A stretch of DNA of 63,788 nucleotides, filler included, from Octopus bimaculoides (taxonomy: Eukaryota), in the NCBI RefSeq assembly GCF_001194135.2. It is 3 parts of 3 records of this genome, joined end to end, with 100 filler letters (N's around TTAATTAATTAA, not from the genome) between each part and the next. Parts side by side here need not be neighbours in the genome. Positions count along the whole stretch, not along the records: positions 30,998 to 56,283 come from NC_069008.1; 2 more parts are not named here. One strand, given 5' to 3'. This document shows positions 41,378 through 49,686 of this stretch, piece after piece. Positions within the stretch are counted from its first letter, which is position 1, and each line of letters opens with the position of its first letter. Both the position numbers and the translations under genes were made by a program. Below the pieces are notes generated by a model. The model had not been told where the DNA came from and made no database searches. It was given only the letters and a program-made list of their open reading frames with translations.

Positions 41378-41745
41378 TAATGAGTGACGATTGACACACA
41401 CCAAAGAAATCACAGTCGTGGCATCTTAACAGAAGATATTGTTGATTCATGGTTAACGAAAGATGATTCACACGTTTGACAGATACACCAAAACAAACCA
41501 AAGTAGGGACATTTTGATAGAAGGTATTGTTTGACTGATTGCTAATGAGTGATGATTGACACATACTTGACAGATTCACTAAAACAAACCCAAAAATATT
41601 CAATAGGGACATTTTAACAAGGTATTGTTGATTGATTATTAATGAGTGACGATTGACACACGACAGCTGCATCAAAACAAGCCAAAAAGCATTCAATAAG
41701 GACATTTTAACAGAAGGTATTGTTGATTGAAATGATAATGAATGC
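41378..41745. repeat. Diverged ~97-bp tandem repeat running into the Tctex ORF start
   Basis: taatga(g/a)tg at 41378, 41543, 41640 and 41736; shared gacattttaaca..aggtattgttgattga. Confidence 0.8.
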
Positions 41746-42439
41746 CAGAAATGATGGTTGGACTGATGTAACCCCTGGCAACAGCAATGGTGTTGGTGTG
41801 AGTGGAAAGAGGATGACCACAGAGGTCACAAAGCCAGAACCCTCGTTAATGAGGCGGTCAAGCTTTTTTGTCCAGAATGCAGAGAGAGCGAAAGAAATAA
41901 GCACTATGCCTTCACTTCTTGGCTTATTGGCATCTAAAAGAATGGCCAAGAAAATCTCGACCCGTCTGTATGAAAGACGCCATGGTCAGAACATGGTGGG
42001 AGTGGCTGCAGCGACGACAACATCAGGTGTAGCAACCACAGCAGCAGCAGCAGCACCTGGGACCTCACTGGGAATGGGCGCCAAACATGAGCCAACTTAC
42101 AGAATGGAACCACTGAGACGATTCCCAAAAGAGACGAGCCCATTGGCAGTGATAAAACGCACCCTTGCTGAGAACCTACGCAATGTGGAGTATGCGCCGA
42201 AAGCGGGAGCCAGACTGGTCATGTATCTGAGCGATGAGATCAGGGACTATGTGAAAGCACTGGAGTTTGACCGTTACAAGATTGTCTGCTATGTGGTTCT
42301 GGGTGAAAAGAAAGACCAGGATGCAACGGTGAGCAGCCGGTGTTCATGGGACGACCGGACTGATGGTTGTGCCTGCTACACATATGAAGCAAACAGCTGG
42401 TACTGTACGGCCATTGTGTATGGTATCTATAAGGAATAG
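41732..42439 (+). CDS. TCTEX1D1-like: Tctex-1 domain dynein light chain (TCTEX1D1/DYNLT5- or TCTEX1D4-like), single uninterrupted ORF; start could be ATG 41732, 41738 or 41813
   Basis: C-terminal ~115 aa (EPTYRMEP...LSDEIRDYVKALEFDRYKIVCYVVLGEKKDQDATVSSRCSWDDRTDGCACYTYEANSWYCTAIVYGIYKE*) is a complete Tctex-1 domain; GC-richer coding island. Exact orthology not determinable by eye. Confidence 0.9.
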   Translation: MIMNARNDGWTDVTPGNSNGVGVSGKRMTTEVTKPEPSLMRRSSFFVQNAERAKEISTMPSLLGLLASKRMAKKISTRLYERRHGQNMVGVAAATTTSGVATTAAAAAPGTSLGMGAKHEPTYRMEPLRRFPKETSPLAVIKRTLAENLRNVEYAPKAGARLVMYLSDEIRDYVKALEFDRYKIVCYVVLGEKKDQDATVSSRCSWDDRTDGCACYTYEANSWYCTAIVYGIYKE

Positions 42440-42458
42440 AGCAGGAAGAAATATGTAA

Positions 42459-42730
42459 TATGAAATGTATTCCAGAAGTCTTGAGAGTTTTGCAGGAGAG
42501 ACATTACTTTCAAACAAGTACAAAACTCTAATCTCTTTCGAAGTAGGGTCTCCTGACTGAATTGCATTTTTTGTAGCACTCCAGCCACTTTGTAAAAGTC
42601 CTCAAAGTGAAGGCGTCTGGGACCCTTGTGACAGCCTCTTTCTTCTTCAAAATGATTTCTCCTGAAGTTCTCTTTCAGCTTGTGGAACAACCAAAGATCA
42701 CAGGGAACAAGGTCAGGACTTTAGGAAACA
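42459..42730 (-). mobile_element. Mariner 3' fragment 1, starting about 20 bp after the Tctex stop
   Basis: rc encodes a PDLVPCDLWLFHKLKENFRRNHFEE-like remnant; terminus ttccagaagtcttgaga. Confidence 0.75.
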
Positions 42731-43757: not shown

Positions 43758-44079
43758 TTGTTATCATTATTATTATTATTATCATTATTATCATTATTAT
43801 TATTATTATCATTATTATCATTATTATTATTATTATCATTATTATTATCATTATTACAGAATGGCACACTTCTTTTAATTTTGACTCTATATCTTCAGCG
43901 GGGGTTACCTCAATCCTTTATATATTATCATTATTATCATTATTATCATTATTATTATTATTATTATCATTATTATTATTATCATTATTATTATCATTAT
44001 TACAGAATGGCACACTTCTTTTAATTTTGACTCTATATCTTCAGGGGGAGTTACCTCAATCCTTTATATATTATCATTA

Positions 44080-44119
<40 letters not shown>

Positions 44120-44124
44120 CATTA

Positions 44125-44165
<41 letters not shown>

Positions 44166-45342
44166 CNNNNNNNNNNNNNNNNNNNNNNNNNNNNNNNNNN
44201 NNNNNNNNNNNNNNNNNNNNNNNNNNNNNNNNNNNNNNNNNNNNNNNNNNNNNNNNNNNNNNNNNNNNNNNNNNNNNNNNNNNNNNNNNNNNNNNNNNNN
44301 NNNNNNNNNNNNNNNNNNNNNNNNNNNNNNNNNNNNNNNNNNNNNNNNNNNNNNNNNNNNNNNNNNNNNNNNNNNNNNNNNNNNNNNNNNNNNNNNNNNN
44401 NNNNNNNNNNNNNNNNNNNNNNNNNNNNNNNNNNNNNNNNNNNNNNNNNNNNNNNNNNNNNNNNNNNNNNNNNNNNNNNNNNNNNNNNNNNNNNNNNNNN
44501 NNNNNNNNNNNNNNNNNNNNNNNNNNNNNNNNNNNNNNNNNNNNNNNNNNNNNNNNNNNNNNNNNNNNNNNNNNNNNNNNNNNNNNNNNNNNNNNNNNNN
44601 NNNNNNNNNNNNNNNNNNNNNNNNNNNNNNNNNNNNNNNNNNNNNNNNNNNNNNNNNNNNNNNNNNNNNNNNNNNNNNNNNNNNNNNNNNNNNNNNNNNN
44701 NNNNNNNNNNNNNNNNNNNNNNNNNNNNNNNNNNNNNNNNNNNNNNNNNNNNNNNNNNNNNNNNNNNNNNNNNNNNNNNNNNNNNNNNNNNNNNNNNNNN
44801 NNNNNNNNNNNNNNNNNNNNNNNNNNNNNNNNNNNNNNNNNNNNNNNNNNNNNNNNNNNNNNNNNNNNNNNNNNNNNNNNNNNNNNNNNNNNNNNNNNNN
44901 NNNNNNNNNNNNNNNNNNNNNNNNNNNNNNNNNNNNNNNNNNNNNNNNNNNNNNNNNNNNNNNNNNNNNNNNNNNNNNNNNNNNNNNNNNNNNNNNNNNN
45001 NNNNNNNNNNNNNNNNNNNNTTGTTATCATTATTATTATTATTATCATTATTATCATTATTATTATTATTATCATTATTATCATTATTATTATTATTATC
45101 ATTATTATTATCATTATTACAGAATGGCACACTTCTTTTAATTTTGACTCTATATCTTCAGCGGGGGTTACCTCAATCCTTTATATATTATCATTATTAT
45201 CATTATTATCATTATTATTATTATTATTATCATTATTATTATTATCATTATTATTATCATTATTACAGAATGGCACACTTCTTTTAATTTTGACTCTATA
45301 TCTTCAGGGGGAGTTACCTCAATCCTTTATATATTATCATTA

Positions 45343-45382
<40 letters not shown>

Positions 45383-45387
45383 CATTA

Positions 45388-45428
<41 letters not shown>
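43758..45428. repeat. (ATT/ATC)n array with a ~75-bp spacer duplicated in tandem; the whole block 43758-44166 is repeated at 45021-45428 across a gap
   Basis: acagaatggcacacttcttttaattttgactc occurs 4 times. Confidence 0.9.
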
Positions 45429-45679
45429 CATGTACACACACGCACGCACACACTACTTCCTTTGTACCCAAAGCAGATGACACTGTTGAGAGAAGCTGGT
45501 GTACAAATCTGGTAAATCTGATATAATGAATTCAATCCACTTCAGTTTCTTTGAGTGATTTGGAAACTAGCGGTAACATGATTTCACTGTGTTCTACATT
45601 GATAAAAATAAATAAACTTATATTTGCTATACATTGTCAAATAAAAAAATTTTGATCACTGTGGGTGTGTGTGTGTATA

Positions 45680-45900: not shown

Positions 45901-46070
45901 AAGGAGTAGCATTAACACTTCTGCCATGGAAGATGGCTCTTCTTGAGTCATATAAGGAGGATAAGACCATTATTTAGAATAACGATCATATCAAATGGCC
46001 AGCATGGAAAAAAACCTTGTGAGTGGATTTGGTAGACAGAAACTGAAAAAAGTCCATCGTATATATATTT

Positions 46071-46171
46071 AGGCACAGGAGTGGGTGTGTGGTAAGAAGT
46101 TTGCTTCTCAATCACATGTTTCTGGGTTCAGGCCCACTGCATGGCACCTTGGGTAAGTGTCTTCTACTATA
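46071..46171 (+). mobile_element. SINE family B head, truncated at the ribozyme-element junction
   Basis: gtgtgtggtaagaagtttgcttc...ggcaccttgggtaagtgtcttctactat, then abrupt switch. Confidence 0.85.
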
Positions 46172-46311
46172 TCATTCCTAAGGTATTTTTTGATATTATT
46201 GTTATTATTAGTATTATTTTTCAGGTCACTGCCTAGAATTGAACTCGGAATCTTGGGGTTAAGAGCACGGGCTACTAACCCCAAGATTCCGAGTTCGATT
46301 CCAGGCAGTGA

Positions 46312-46346
<35 letters not shown>

Positions 46347-46393
46347 TTGAAAAATACCTTAGGAATGAGAACCCAGATTCGAAATTTCTCGAA

Positions 46394-46439
46394 GACACCT
46401 GATGAAGGCTGGAGGGTGTATCAGCTGAAACGTTGTGTT
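46394..46439 (+). ncRNA. Minimal type-I hammerhead ribozyme (predicted cleavage GUU^ after 46434)
   Basis: gacac-CTGATGA-a-ggctg(gagggtgtat)cagct-GAAA-cgtt-gtgtt: stem I gacac/gtgtt, 5-bp stem II, palindromic ACGU stem III. Confidence 0.75.
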
Positions 46440-46597
46440 AACAAACAAGATGAGGACAAATATCCATCAAATGTAAATAATGTAAATAATTCCTCATCTC
46501 TTAAATACAGAACTGAATAATAATAATAACAACAACAACAACAACAGCATCGAAAAAATACCTTAGGAATGAGAACCCAGGTTCGAAATTTCCCCAA

Positions 46598-46643
46598 GGC
46601 ACCTGATGAAGGCTGGAGGGTAAATCAGCCGAAACGCTGTGTT
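46598..46643 (+). ncRNA. Hammerhead ribozyme copy, probably inactive (U16.1>C)
   Basis: ggcac-CTGATGA-a-ggctg...cagcc-GAAA-cgCt-gtgtt. Confidence 0.6.
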
Positions 46644-47782
46644 AACAACAAACAAGATGAGGACAAATATCCGTCAAATGTAAATATTGTAAATAATTCC
46701 TTATCTCTTAAATACATAACTGAACTTTGAACTGTATGCCAGAAAATATGGTATTGACCATACAGATGTAGGCATGGCTGCTTCACAACCACATAGTCAA
46801 GGGTTCAAACCTTGGGTAAGTCTCTTCTACTATTGCCAAAACTGTGTGAATGGATTTCATAGATGGAAAGTGAGAGGAATCTATTGTATAGATTATTCTC
46901 TTATTTGTTTCAGTCATTTGACTGTGGCCATGCTGGAGCACCACCTTTAGTCGAGCAAATCGATCCTAGGACATATGTATATTGATAAAATAAATACCAG
47001 TTGTGCACTGGGGTTGATGTAATCTACTTAGCCGCCTCCTCAAAATTGCTGGTCTTGTGCCAAAACTTGACAGCAGTATTTCAAGTACAAATCTAGAACA
47101 TTCTAAAATCTTCTAGAACAAATCTAGGACATTCAACGCTGCTCTANNNNNNNNNNNNNNNNNNNNNNNNNNNNNNNNNNNNNNNNNNNNNNNNNNNNNN
47201 NNNNNNNNNNNNNNNNNNNNNNNNNNNNNNNNNNNNNNNNNNNNNNNNNNNNNNNNNNNNNNNNNNNNNNNNNNNNNNNNNNNNNNNNNNNNNNNNNNNN
47301 NNNNNNNNNNNNNNNNNNNNNNNNNNNNNNNNNNNNNNNNNNNNNNNNNNNNNNNNNNNNNNNNNNNNNNNNNNNNNNNNNNNNNNNNNNNNNNNNNNNN
47401 NNNNNNNNNNNNNNNNNNNNNNNNNNNNNNNNNNNNNNNNNNNNNNNNNNNNNNNNNNNNNNNNNNNNNNNNNNNNNNNNNNNNNNNNNNNNNNNNNNNN
47501 NNNNNNNNNNNNNNNNNNNNNNNNNNNNNNNNNNNNNNNNNNNNNNNNNNNNNNNNNNNNNNNNNNNNNNNNNNNNNNNNNNNNNNNNNNNTGGTGAGGG
47601 GCATCGTTGGTTGGTTTTATATTTCTACTTTATTTTTAAGAAATGTGGGAATAGGTTGGTGGAGCAGGGTAGCAGTTAGGGGATTTATGTATATCTGCTA
47701 TTCGTTATTTGAGTGTTATATAAATTCGTTATATGCGTGTGTGAATATGATTTTTTTTTTTTAAACAAAATGTTACAATAGA

Positions 47783-48155
47783 TGCAGGTGTGGCTGTGTG
47801 GTAAGAGGCTTGCTTCCCAACCACATGGTTCTGGGTTCAGTCCCACTGAGTGACACCTTGGGCAAACATCGTCTATATAACTGCAGGCTGACTAAACACG
47901 TGTGAGTGGATTTGGTAGACGGAAACTGAAAGAAGCACGTCGTGTGTATAGCTGTTTCAGTCATTAAACTGAGGTCATGCTGGGGCATCATGCTGAAGAA
48001 CTTTTAATCAAATGAATTAACCCTAGTACTTACTTTTTTTTAAAGCCTGGTACTTATTATATCAGTCTCTTTTTGCTGAACCGCTAAGTTACAAGGATGT
48101 AAACAAACAAACACTAGTCATCGAGTGGTGATGGAAGACAGACACAAAGACACAC
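47783..48155. mobile_element. SINE family B: head on plus (47783-47945), tail on minus (47953-48155)
   Basis: Both halves align to 10391-10808 but in opposite orientations. Confidence 0.75.
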
Positions 48156-48844: not shown

Positions 48845-49278
48845 ACCATTTGGTATTCAAACTGGCAATATCTGGCCCAGATATTCTACCGTTTTTATGT
48901 TCATAGTGGCCAGATCCTGCCTCTTACACTTACCCTACAATGTCATTCTGAACATAAATAATCACATTATCAAAATCTCGAAGCCTGTAAGATAATGCAG
49001 GATTAATTCAAAATAATGTGAATAAATAAACATTACATTTGATAGAGGAATCTGAATGCTAAAGGGTTACACTGGTCATATCTGGTCCAAATATTCTCCC
49101 TGTTTTATGTTCATACTGGCCACATCCAGCCTCTCACACCTACCCTACAATGCCATTCTAAAAATAAGCAACCATCACCAAGGCCTCAAAGCTATGAGAT
49201 AATGCAGGATTAATTCAAAGCAATGTGAATAAATAAGGATTACATTTGACACAGGAATCTGAATGCTAAAGGGTTAAA
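48845..49278 (+). mobile_element. TTAA MITE family H, two head-to-tail copies
   Basis: Both end atctgaatgctaaagggtta(c/a); internal sequences align. Confidence 0.8.
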
Positions 49279-49291
49279 ACAAGACCATATC

Positions 49292-49686
<395 letters not shown>

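What the first reader, a model, noticed from the sequence alone, without database searches (positions are those of the whole stretch)
46172..46722. tRNA-headed, tandem hammerhead-ribozyme element: candidate Pol III retrozyme/SINE mobilised by Penelope-like RT
Seen: a tRNA-like head (ggttaagagcacgggctactaaccccaagattccgagttcgattcc, B box intact) followed by (AAT)n and two ~204-nt tandem units, each holding stemI-CTGATGA-A-stemII-GAAA-cg(t/c)t-stemI'. Known: Penelope-like elements and metazoan non-LTR retrozymes carry minimal type-I hammerheads whose palindromic stem III (ACGU) lets them work as dimers. An extra A between A9 and G10.1 is tolerated, as in the ChCMVd plus-strand hammerhead. Inference: Pol III read-through plus self-cleavage would release ~204-nt monomers that may circularise. 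I know of no description of a SINE head fused to a retrozyme array, but I cannot confirm novelty.
Basis: partly seen in the sequence, partly recalled or inferred. Interest (0 to 1): 0.85.

Follow-up and report, generated by a model that had tools for sequence, protein, structure and literature searches.

The report
Decayed hammerhead-ribozyme repeat in octopus DNA
This is a worn-out copy of a small mobile repeat in the Octopus bimaculoides genome that carries the minimal self-cutting "hammerhead" RNA motif typical of Penelope-like retroelements; the supposed tRNA-like head is really the centre of a 197-base palindrome and does not look like a working promoter, so the finding is a new example of a known kind, not a new kind.

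Summary
The window is Octopus bimaculoides chromosome CM046628.1. The two ~204-nt tandem units and their hammerhead (HHR) cores are real. A strict HHR descriptor hits unit 1 and none of 200 shuffles. A second array of the same unit lies 2.6 kb away on the other strand.

The six-copy consensus is GACAC-CUGAUGA-A-GGCUGG...UCAGCC-GAAA-CG-UU|GUGUU. This matches the published Penelope-like-element (PLE) "min-HHR": short helix I, an unpaired base before helix II, and a tiny palindromic helix III that needs a dimer. Every copy here carries a point change or a truncation, so these are probably relics.

Its outer ends are the first 24 nt of the unit, inverted. The head has a B-box-like motif but no A box. 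It gets no tRNA call from default ARAGORN or Rfam, unlike a control SINE in the same piece. It is absent from the one other 5'-complete copy.

Partial tandems, a shared 3' end and an inverted 5' copy (plus possible 5' truncation at locus 2) are described PLE insertion hallmarks. SINE-like, Pol III-transcribed HHR repeats are already known (Schistosoma Sm-alpha).

Verdict: a new member of a known kind. The SINE/Pol III reading is unsupported but not excluded.

The parts
46172..46261 (-). Left (inverted) arm of the palindrome. It is the reverse complement of the unit's first ~24 nt (46172-46194), a degenerate (AAT)n tract (46195-46221) and the 40-nt head arm (46222-46261).
   Evidence: the repeat finder I1/I2/I7; arm alignment; blastn self-hit at 88%.
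46262..46275 (.). Unique 14-nt centre of the palindrome (agagcacgggctac). Inferred to be the point where cDNA synthesis turned back.
   Evidence: Fold of 46172-46368: -128.8 kcal/mol, z = -24.5, with this stretch as the apical loop.
46276..46315 (+). Right head arm. It is GC-rich (52% for the whole head 46222-46315, both arms plus the loop) and holds the B-box-like AGTTCGATTCC at 46292-46302. No A box lies upstream.
   Evidence: ARAGORN default gives 0. Only a marginal cloverleaf appears at 80% thresholds, on both strands. Rfam finds nothing.
46316..46344 (+). (AAT)9.7 microsatellite that precedes each unit body.
   Evidence: TRF. The same tract type lies at 46518-46548 and 49569-49472.
46345..46517 (+). 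Unit 1 body, ending ...AGAACTGAA.
   Evidence: Alignment A5; nhmmer E = 2e-54.
46394..46439 (+). Hammerhead 1. Helix I is GACAC/GUGUU. CUGAUGA lies at 46399-46405 with an extra A at 46406. Helix II is 46407-46412/46421-46426 with G10.1.U11.1. GAAA lies at 46427-46430, ACGU at 46430-46433, and U17 at 46434 is the cleavage site.
   Evidence: The only hit of the strict descriptor; 0 of 200 shuffles hit. Stems I and II are in the MFE fold.
46518..46548 (+). (AAT)n(AAC)n microsatellite between units 1 and 2.
46549..46724 (+). Unit 2 body, the 3' end of the array (...ATAACTGAA).
   Evidence: A5; nhmmer E = 4e-57.
46598..46643 (+). Hammerhead 2. The core and the G10.1-C11.1 pair are intact, but position 16.1 is C (46637), which breaks the A15.1-U16.1 pair. 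U17 is at 46638.
   Evidence: Sequence; fails the descriptor; alignment.
49570..49686 (-). Second array, unit 4. It starts inside the CUGAUGA box (tgaaggctgg) and keeps helix II, GAAA, ACGU and U17 (49654).
49472..49569 (-). (AAT)~33 microsatellite between units 4 and 3, read as (TTA)n on the + strand.
   Evidence: TRF.
49288..49471 (-). Second array, unit 3. Its hammerhead spans 49422-49377 with an intact core, G10.1.U11.1 and helix III AUGU (CpG decay). It ends ...AGAACTGG, the same 3' end as locus 1.

Best explanation
These are two old, decaying insertions of an octopus family of short non-autonomous retroelements. Each unit has a ~175-nt body plus a variable (AAT)n tract, about 204 nt in all.

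What each unit carries. Each unit holds a type-I hammerhead of the minimal kind associated with Penelope-like elements. Helix III is only the self-complementary ACGU. An active ribozyme therefore requires two copies to pair, each core cutting the other copy's site. Tandem transcripts allow this.

Inferred life cycle (not shown here). A multimeric transcript is cut by paired hammerheads, possibly circularised by a host ligase, and copied back into DNA by a PLE reverse transcriptase/GIY-YIG endonuclease supplied in trans.

What the anatomy shows:
- Both arrays end at the same 3' position.
- The second array starts inside the catalytic box, which suggests 5' truncation. An internal deletion after its (TAA)3 is not excluded.
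- The first array is capped at its 5' end by an inverted partial copy of itself. This is the published PLE insertion signature.

The 'tRNA-like head' (inferred). It is the innermost ~47 nt of each palindrome arm plus a 14-nt centre. I read it as extra sequence that sat at the 5' end of the RNA or cDNA that was inserted. It could be read-in from the source locus, or a template switch onto a tRNA-related RNA. The reverse transcriptase then turned back on its own product and duplicated it in inverted orientation. I do not read it as a functional Pol III promoter of the family.

State of this locus. It is probably inert. Only the unit 1 site (after 46434), paired with the intact unit 2 core, still looks cleavable, so a 204-nt monomer cannot be released.
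For: - Tandem units and a second array.
- The hammerhead passes a strict descriptor with 0 of 200 shuffles hitting.
- The six-copy consensus gives a canonical core. 93% of stem I/II cells are paired, against 15-44% when partners are slid.
- The palindrome includes the unit's own 5' end.
- PLE insertions are described as 5'-truncated partial tandems, often with an inverted 5'-truncated copy at the 5' end, a 30-40 bp extra 'tail' and a microsatellite bias (PMC8557442).
- Outside the microsatellite the arms differ at 2 of ~70 positions, against ~10% between tandem units. Within-array units are not each other's closest relatives: u1-u4 95%, u1-u2 90%. This fits insertion of already-diverged multimers rather than duplication in place.
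- The head has no A box, no default ARAGORN call and no Rfam tRNA hit. A control tRNA-derived SINE in the same piece has a perfect A box and scores 14 bits.
- The head has 52% GC against 35% for the unit.
- The head is absent upstream of the 5'-complete solo copy in L002.
- PLEs are present in octopus genomes (PMC13282606).
Against: - No genome-wide copy set could be retrieved. Linkage of head and unit rests on one informative external copy.
- No compensatory changes were seen: 6 copies, 0 double changes.
- Rfam hammerhead models do not hit. I attribute this to the missing loop 3 but did not test it.
- No reverse transcriptase or GIY-YIG ORF lies in the 25-kb piece. No homology to a PLE pseudo-LTR could be tested, so the PLE partner is inferred.
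- The array's 3' end does not coincide with the ribozyme cleavage site, so the exact template form is unknown.
- The B-box-like motif is rarer than chance and no Pol III terminator lies in the array.
- The palindrome is seen in only one assembly, because the window is that assembly.
Confidence: 0.6

Rival explanations
1. The tRNA-like head is an integral Pol III promoter module of the family, a SINE-type head. It drives read-through transcription of the tandem units, which then self-cleave into ~204-nt monomers. The copy here has lost the first ~17 nt, including the A box, through incomplete reverse transcription followed by snap-back.
For: - A B-box core is present and rare: 2 in the window against 0.11 expected.
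- The head sits exactly at the 5' end of the array.
- No T4 terminator lies on the + strand from 46224 to 46800.
- The head is GC-rich like tRNA-derived sequence.
- ARAGORN gives a marginal cloverleaf at 80% thresholds.
- There is precedent in Schistosoma Sm-alpha.
Against: - No A box within 3 mismatches.
- No tRNA call at default thresholds and no Rfam tRNA hit, although a control SINE head in the same piece is detected.
- The relaxed cloverleaf appears on both strands. Its acceptor stem is simply the palindrome, and its D, anticodon and T stems are poor.
- L002 has a 5'-complete unit with a microsatellite but no head.
- The head shares only the 12-nt B box with a genuine SINE head.
Confidence: 0.13
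2. The palindrome has nothing to do with retrotransposition. It is a later DNA-level inverted duplication (fold-back replication error) of the array's 5' junction together with a pre-existing tRNA-related flank, or a short-read assembly artefact.
For: - The scaffold is a gap-rich draft. It contains a 409-bp block duplicated at 100% identity on both sides of a gap, 43758-44166 = 45021-45429.
- Palindromes are known trouble spots for assembly (PMC8557442).
- The arms are more alike than the tandem units.
Against: - The arms differ by substitutions and a 3-nt indel, for 88-89% overall. An assembly artefact would not produce this.
- The inverted segment starts exactly within element sequence, as in described PLE insertions.
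Confidence: 0.15
3. The hammerhead-like strings are fortuitous. The repeat is an ordinary AT-rich minisatellite or SINE fragment with no ribozyme ancestry.
For: - No Rfam hammerhead hit.
- No covariation.
- Monomer fold z-score of only -1.8.
Against: - 0 of 200 shuffles give any descriptor hit.
- The most conserved block of the unit across six copies, including two ~75%-identical copies from other read sets, is the helix II-GAAA region.
- All the idiosyncratic features match the published PLE min-HHR.
Confidence: 0.05

Closest known systems
Minimal hammerhead ribozymes of Penelope-like elements (min-HHR; Cervera & de la Pena 2014; Lunse, Weinberg & Breaker 2016/17)
   Same: - Type-I topology.
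- Helix I of 5 bp and helix II of 6 bp.
- An unpaired nucleotide between A9 and G10.1.
- Helix III reduced to a self-complementary ACGU, so only a dimer can be active.
- Massive dispersal as truncated copies in metazoan genomes.
- Insertions as partial tandems, with an inverted 5' copy at locus 1 and possible 5' truncation at locus 2.
   Different: - No PLE ORF or pseudo-LTR context lies within 25 kb.
- The motif sits in a 204-nt unit with an internal (AAT)n tract.
- Homology of the unit to an octopus PLE pseudo-LTR was not testable.
Metazoan non-LTR retrozymes (Cervera & de la Pena 2020, PMC7229834; Li, Clavereau & Pollet 2026 preprint)
   Same: - Short tandem repeats, 204 nt here against 170-400 nt.
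- Low GC (33%).
- One type-I hammerhead per unit.
- Occur as monomers, dimers and multimers.
- Proposed dependence on PLE machinery.
   Different: - Described invertebrate retrozymes carry canonical hammerheads that cut efficiently as monomers. This one has the PLE-type minimal motif.
- Expression and circularisation are untested.
- The copies here are mutated.
Schistosoma Sm-alpha / Sj-alpha SINE-like elements (Ferbeyre et al. 1998; Laha et al. 2000)
   Same: A short interspersed, tandemly arranged repeat that combines a hammerhead with a Pol III-type promoter.
   Different: - In Sm-alpha the Pol III promoter is part of every unit, and the hammerhead is canonical and active.
- Here only a B-box-like motif exists. 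It occurs once, outside the units, inside a palindrome, with no A box.
CChMVd plus-strand hammerhead (De la Pena & Flores 2001)
   Same: An extra nucleotide between A9 and G10.1 is tolerated. Cervera & de la Pena 2014 cite it as the parallel for PLE min-HHRs.
   Different: It is a viroid type-III hammerhead with a stable helix III, and is unrelated in sequence and biology.

Membership tests
Hammerhead ribozyme (type I, PLE min-HHR variant) | Conserved core C3-U4-G5-A6-N7-G8-A9 ... G12-A13-A14, the A15.1-U16.1 pair, and H17 not G | tested here: met
   Met in unit 1, unit 3 and the six-copy consensus. Unit 2 fails at 16.1 (C at 46637). Unit 4 lacks the first four core bases.
Hammerhead ribozyme (type I, PLE min-HHR variant) | Helices I and II flanking the core, with open ends in helix I | tested here: met
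   Helix I has 5 bp and helix II has 6 bp. 93% of cells are paired across 6 copies, against 15-44% for slid controls. Both helices are in the MFE fold. No compensatory changes are available.
Hammerhead ribozyme (type I, PLE min-HHR variant) | [quoted passage not shown] | tested here: met
   Extra A at 46406 and 46610. ACGU at 46430-46433. Compared with the description in PMC4209133.
Hammerhead ribozyme (type I, PLE min-HHR variant) | Match to curated Rfam hammerhead covariance models | tested here: not met
   No hit at E<=10 on 25 kb or on 901 nt. The cause is probably the absent loop 3. That is my inference and was not tested.
Hammerhead ribozyme (type I, PLE min-HHR variant) | Self-cleavage at H17 | not testable with these tools
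   Needs in vitro transcription of dimer constructs.
Non-LTR retrozyme | Tandem repeats of ~170-400 bp, each with a type-I hammerhead, and low GC | tested here: met
   204-nt period with 2.0 copies. A second array has ~1.7 units. GC is 0.33 and 0.25.
Non-LTR retrozyme | Expressed as linear and circular unit-length RNAs | not testable with these tools
   No RNA data are available. The only hint of transcription is that a unit fragment is part of a predicted dystrobrevin-beta isoform (P0003).
Non-LTR retrozyme | Canonical hammerhead with a helix III/loop 3 that cuts efficiently on its own, as described for invertebrate retrozymes | tested here: not met
   Helix III is a loop-less ACGU. PMC7229834 sets such minimal motifs apart as PLE/Terminon-type.
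Penelope-like-element-mobilised insertion | 5' truncation, partial tandems, an inverted 5'-truncated copy at the 5' end, and association with microsatellites | tested here: met
   Locus 2 starts inside CUGAUGA and both loci share a 3' end. Locus 1 has the inverted copy. (AAT)n lies at every junction. Definition taken from PMC8557442.
Penelope-like-element-mobilised insertion | RT plus GIY-YIG ORF, or homology of the unit to a PLE pseudo-LTR | tested here: not met
   A Pfam scan of 89 ORF segments of at least 55 aa finds only Tctex-1. Pseudo-LTR homology could not be tested because no octopus PLE sequences are at hand.
tRNA-derived SINE (Pol III type-2 promoter) | A box (TRGCNNAGTGG) 30-60 nt upstream of the B box | tested here: not met
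   No match within 3 mismatches in 46172-46300. The control SINE at 38696-38763(-) has a perfect A box.
tRNA-derived SINE (Pol III type-2 promoter) | B box (GGTTCGANNCC) | tested here: met
   AGTTCGATTCC at 46292-46302, 1 mismatch. The core is rare in the window. The copy in the left arm is mutated.
tRNA-derived SINE (Pol III type-2 promoter) | Recognisable tRNA-like cloverleaf | tested here: not met
   ARAGORN default gives 0. Rfam gives no tRNA hit, against 14.2 bits for the control SINE. A relaxed ARAGORN cloverleaf appears on both strands and is built from the palindrome.
tRNA-derived SINE (Pol III type-2 promoter) | Head linked to body in most full-length copies | tested here: inconclusive
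   Only one other 5'-complete copy was found (L002), and it lacks the head. Locus 2 and L001 are uninformative. The octopus genome could not be searched.

The most novel reading that the evidence does not exclude
The head is the remnant of a genuine tRNA-derived Pol III module that heads full-length members of this octopus family. This would be a cephalopod counterpart of Schistosoma Sm-alpha, built on a PLE-type dimeric hammerhead and mobilised by PLE machinery rather than LINE machinery. A variant of this reading: the palindrome centre, which falls at about tRNA position 26-29, records a reverse transcriptase that switched onto a tRNA and snapped back.
Probability: 0.13. Interest if true: 0.5.

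Novelty: new member of a known kind. Interest (0 to 1): 0.25.

Why it matters
If the main reading holds, this adds cephalopods to the animals whose genomes carry tandem, PLE-type hammerhead repeats. Neither the octopus repeat annotation I read (PMC13282606) nor the retrozyme papers mention hammerheads or retrozymes in octopus. It also gives a clean small example of PLE-style insertion anatomy on a non-autonomous element: a shared 3' end, partial tandems, a possible 5' truncation and a 5' snap-back palindrome. That is useful for repeat annotation, but it does not change what is known. It would become more interesting only if the head proved to be a recurrent Pol III module.

Tried and rejected
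- Rfam in E-value mode on 25 kb, 901 nt and the 67-nt head gave no hammerhead and no tRNA. The mir-297/mir-466 hits are microsatellite artefacts.
- I tried to collect more family copies through spurious ORFs in the unit.
  - The plus-frame profile gave 4 proteins: two O. bimaculoides entries and two Logan contigs, L001 and L002.
  - The minus-frame profile gave 2 O. bimaculoides UniRef entries with no DNA.
  - The head-frame profile gave nothing.
  - P0001 and P0005 and three window ORFs (46569-46730+, 46108-46398-, 46157-46402+) are not on record. The TTG-start version of the Tctex-1 ORF also missed. P0003's gene is too long to fetch.
- Exact DNA scans of the metagenome, viral and GTDB collections gave zero or chance hits. 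This held for the core and for the head (inspected).
- Fetching the locus through the neighbouring Tctex-1 gene showed that the window is GCA_001194135.2 itself. It therefore gave no independent check of the palindrome.
- The covariation count on 6 copies is uninformative, with 0 double changes.
- I considered and rejected the idea that the head is a diverged unit 3' end. Only the last ~8 nt (A[A/C]CTGAA) are shared.
- I considered and rejected the idea that the head belongs to the flanking octopus SINE family or to the tRNA-SINE at 38.7 kb. Only the 12-nt B box aligns.
- The SRR run identifiers of L001 and L002 were not found in the literature, so their species is unknown.
Full report
**Source and setting**

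The piece (30998-56283) is 100% identical, gaps included, to Octopus bimaculoides assembly GCA_001194135.2, chromosome CM046628.1, at about 2.95-2.97 Mb. I recovered this through the neighbouring single-exon Tctex-1 gene. The piece is a gap-rich, microsatellite-rich, SINE-rich draft region with 15-43% GC.

**The tandem units are real**

- TRF reports a 204-nt period with 2.0 copies at 46316-46724, at 88% identity.
- Each unit consists of an (AAT)n or (AAC)n tract and a ~175-nt body.
- In unit 1 the hammerhead reads as follows:
  - helix I 5' strand GACAC (46394-46398)
  - CUGAUGA (46399-46405)
  - an extra A (46406)
  - helix II GGCUGG/UCAGCU (46407-46412 and 46421-46426)
  - GAAA (46427-46430)
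  - CG, then U16.1 (46433) and U17 (46434)
  - helix I 3' strand GUGUU (46435-46439)
- I wrote a strict descriptor requiring:
  - helix I of at least 4 bp
  - CUGANGA, then 0-1 extra base
  - helix II of at least 4 bp
  - GAAA
  - a helix III that is a hairpin or a palindrome
  - U16.1, and H17 not G
- It finds exactly this site on both strands of the piece and nothing in 200 dinucleotide shuffles. ViennaRNA places helices I and II in the minimum-energy fold.

- The quoted string is the right half and centre of a 197-nt palindrome, 46172-46368.
  - Arms 46191-46266 and 46271-46346 are 89% complementary.
  - The outer pair 46172-46191 / 46553-46572 is 100% complementary.
  - As RNA it folds at -128.8 kcal/mol with z = -24.5.
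- Read outwards from a 14-nt unique centre (46262-46275), each arm holds 40 nt of head, an (AAT)n tract, and the first ~24 nt of the unit. The left arm is thus an inverted partial copy of the 5' end of the array.
- Outside the microsatellite the arms differ at only 2 of ~70 positions plus a 3-nt indel. They are not identical, which argues against a pure assembly artefact.

**Is the head tRNA-like?**

- For:
  - AGTTCGATTCC at 46292-46302 is a one-mismatch B box.
  - The core GTTCGANNCC occurs only twice in the window, against 0.11 expected.
  - The head has 52% GC against 35% for the unit.
- Against:
  - ARAGORN finds no tRNA at default thresholds.
  - At 80% of its thresholds it draws an 88-nt cloverleaf on both strands. 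The acceptor stem is just the palindrome, and the D, anticodon and T stems are poor.
  - Rfam in permissive mode gives no tRNA hit on 901 nt or on the head alone.
  - No A box lies within three mismatches upstream of the B box.
- Control: a genuine tRNA-derived SINE head in the same piece (38696-38763, minus strand) has a perfect A box, a B box and a 14.2-bit Rfam tRNA match. It shares only the 12-nt B box with the head.
- Conclusion: the head probably descends from some tRNA-related sequence, but in this copy it is not a complete type-2 Pol III promoter.

**A second array**

- blastn and an nhmmer profile find the same unit on the minus strand at 49686-49288.
- It starts inside the catalytic box (…taataataa|TGAAGGCTGG).
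- It continues through about 33 AAT repeats into a complete unit.
- It ends …AGAACTGG, the same 3' end as locus 1 (…ATAACTGAA).
- It has no head, but because it does not reach the unit's 5' end this says nothing about head linkage.
- There are only four unit copies in the piece.

**Other copies of the family**

- The unit happens to contain a ~55-codon open frame, which I used as a handle.
- The search returned two O. bimaculoides proteins.
  - One is a predicted dystrobrevin-beta isoform that includes a unit fragment.
  - Two Logan contigs were also returned.
- L001 and L002 each hold one decayed solo unit, 71-82% identical to the window's units.
  - L001 has CTAATGA and L002 has CTGACGA/AAAA in place of the core.
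  - L002 is 5'-complete and is preceded by a microsatellite-like tract and unrelated sequence, not by the head.
  - The L001 contig begins in the (AAT)n tract.
- Further protein-handle searches and exact DNA scans of the metagenome, viral and GTDB collections gave nothing usable.
- Linkage of head and unit therefore rests on one informative copy, which is negative.

**Consensus and state of the ribozymes**

- The six-copy consensus is GACAC CUGAUGA A GGCUGG AGGGUAUA UCAGCC GAAA CG UU|GUGUU.
- Individual copies depart from it by single transitions, mostly at CpG:
  - Unit 1 and unit 3 have U at 11.1, giving a G.U wobble.
  - Unit 2 has C at 16.1, which breaks the essential A15.1-U16.1 pair.
  - Unit 3 has AUGU instead of ACGU.
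  - Unit 4 lacks the first four core bases.
- In a domain-swapped dimer, each core cuts the partner's site. The intact unit 2 core could cut the unit 1 site, but the reverse is impaired. This locus therefore cannot release a 204-nt monomer. This step is inference from established hammerhead structure.
- Across the six copies, 93% of helix I/II cells pair, against 15-44% in slid controls. There are no compensatory changes, so covariation is untested rather than negative.
- The monomer fold is only mildly better than shuffles, z = -1.8.

**Comparison with what is known**

[quoted passage not shown] They are selected to work as dimers and are spread massively through metazoan genomes. The review PMC6765202 says the same. 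The octopus motif fits each point.
- Cervera & de la Pena (2020) define non-LTR retrozymes as 170-400-nt low-GC tandem repeats with type-I hammerheads. They set the minimal PLE/Terminon motifs apart from the canonical ones. [quoted passage not shown]
- Craig et al. (2021) describe PLE insertions as strongly 5'-truncated partial tandems. These often have an inverted 5'-truncated copy at the 5' end, a 30-40-bp extra tail and a microsatellite bias. Partial tandems, an inverted 5' copy and microsatellite junctions are seen here, and locus 2's start inside the core fits 5' truncation.
- PLEs are present in octopus genomes. No RT or GIY-YIG ORF lies in this 25-kb piece, so any PLE partner acts in trans and is inferred.
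- Within-array units are not each other's closest relatives: u1-u4 95%, u2-u4 93%, u1-u2 90%, u3-u4 91%. This weakly favours insertion of already-diverged multimers over duplication in place.

**The novelty claim**

SINE-like, apparently Pol III-transcribed, tandemly arranged hammerhead elements are textbook in schistosomes: Sm-alpha and Sj-alpha.

**Most likely mechanism**

- An RNA containing at least two units was reverse-transcribed at a nicked target from its defined 3' end (…AACUGAA).
- At locus 2 synthesis or joining apparently stopped inside the core, or a later internal deletion removed that stretch.
- At locus 1 synthesis ran through the first unit and its (AAU)n into ~50 nt of foreign, tRNA-related sequence. 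That sequence could be read-in from the source locus or a template switch.
- The enzyme then turned back on the nascent strand for ~95 nt before joining. This created the palindrome.
- Shown: the anatomy. Inferred: the enzyme, the template form and the origin of the head.
- Unexplained: why the arrays' 3' ends do not coincide with the ribozyme cut site, and what the head originally was.

**Verdict**

- The element is a new (octopus) member of the known PLE-type hammerhead / retrozyme-like repeats, and in this locus it is a relic.
- The SINE-head idea is not supported by the A-box, tRNA-model and linkage tests. It cannot be excluded without a genome-wide survey.

Noticed in passing
window 41732-42439 (+): An intact single-exon gene for a 235-aa Tctex-1 family (dynein light chain-type) protein, Pfam PF03645, E = 5e-24. 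It matches exactly a gene called on GCA_001194135.2 chromosome CM046628.1, which identified the window as Octopus bimaculoides.
   Followed up: yes
window 38685-38775 (-): The head of a tRNA-derived SINE. It has a perfect A box (TGGCTCAGTGG), a B box (AGTTCGAATCC) and a weak Rfam tRNA match (14.2 bits). I used it as a positive control.
   Followed up: partly
window 46016-46170, 46770-46900, 47785-47950 (+): Copies of another abundant octopus SINE-like repeat (ggtaagaRgyttgcttc...gggttcag...cttgggYaa...gtgagtggatttggtagacgg). The copy left of the element stops at ...cttctactata (46170) and lacks its 3' ~70 nt. The insertion seems to have been accompanied by a deletion, and no target-site duplication is visible.
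   Followed up: partly
window 48861-49276: A different 210-nt tandem repeat (2 copies, 83%) directly abuts the 3' end of the second hammerhead array. It has no hammerhead motif and its identity is unknown.
   Followed up: no
window 43758-44166 and 45021-45429: Two 409-bp blocks, 100% identical, lie on either side of an N gap. Each contains a 146-nt tandem repeat. This is probably an assembly duplication across the gap.
   Followed up: no
window 42430-42720 (-) and 55336-55667 (-); 55069-55520: ORF fragments that look like C-terminal remnants of Tc1/mariner-type transposases (e.g. SPDLVPCDLWLFHKLKENF..., ...FPALSPDLMPMDFF...). I judged this by eye; Pfam gave no significant hit. The second lies in a 231-nt tandem repeat at 99% identity with 2 copies, interrupted by a short run of N.
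   Followed up: no
protein P0003 (O. bimaculoides, gene on another chromosome-scale contig of 97.8 Mb of GCA_001194135.2): A predicted 'dystrobrevin beta isoform X1' of 94 aa begins with a translated fragment of this repeat unit (GEGWRVYQPKCCVNNKQDEDKYPSK). It covers helix II, GAAA and the cleavage site. This hints that at least one copy is transcribed or exonised.
   Followed up: no
protein P0005 (UniRef A0A0L8H9T6, O. bimaculoides): This is a minus-frame translation of another copy. It loses similarity to the unit within about 3 nt of the predicted ribozyme cleavage site (...CLLLTQ|VTCS...). It may therefore be a copy whose 5' end was made by self-cleavage. This is a protein-level inference only, and no DNA could be fetched.
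   Followed up: partly
L001 ~170-192 and L002 ~215-232: Both diverged solo copies lose similarity to the unit at the same point, after ...GTAAATAAT(G)TAAATAAT. They lack the last ~35 nt (TCCTCATCTCTTAAATACAGAACTGAA). The family may have subfamilies with different 3' ends.
   Followed up: no
window 51087-51330, 56168-56283 and other (GT)n/(TA)n tracts: The Rfam sub-threshold hits to mir-297, mir-466, mir-3149 and similar families all fall on dinucleotide microsatellites. They are artefacts of low complexity.
   Followed up: yes
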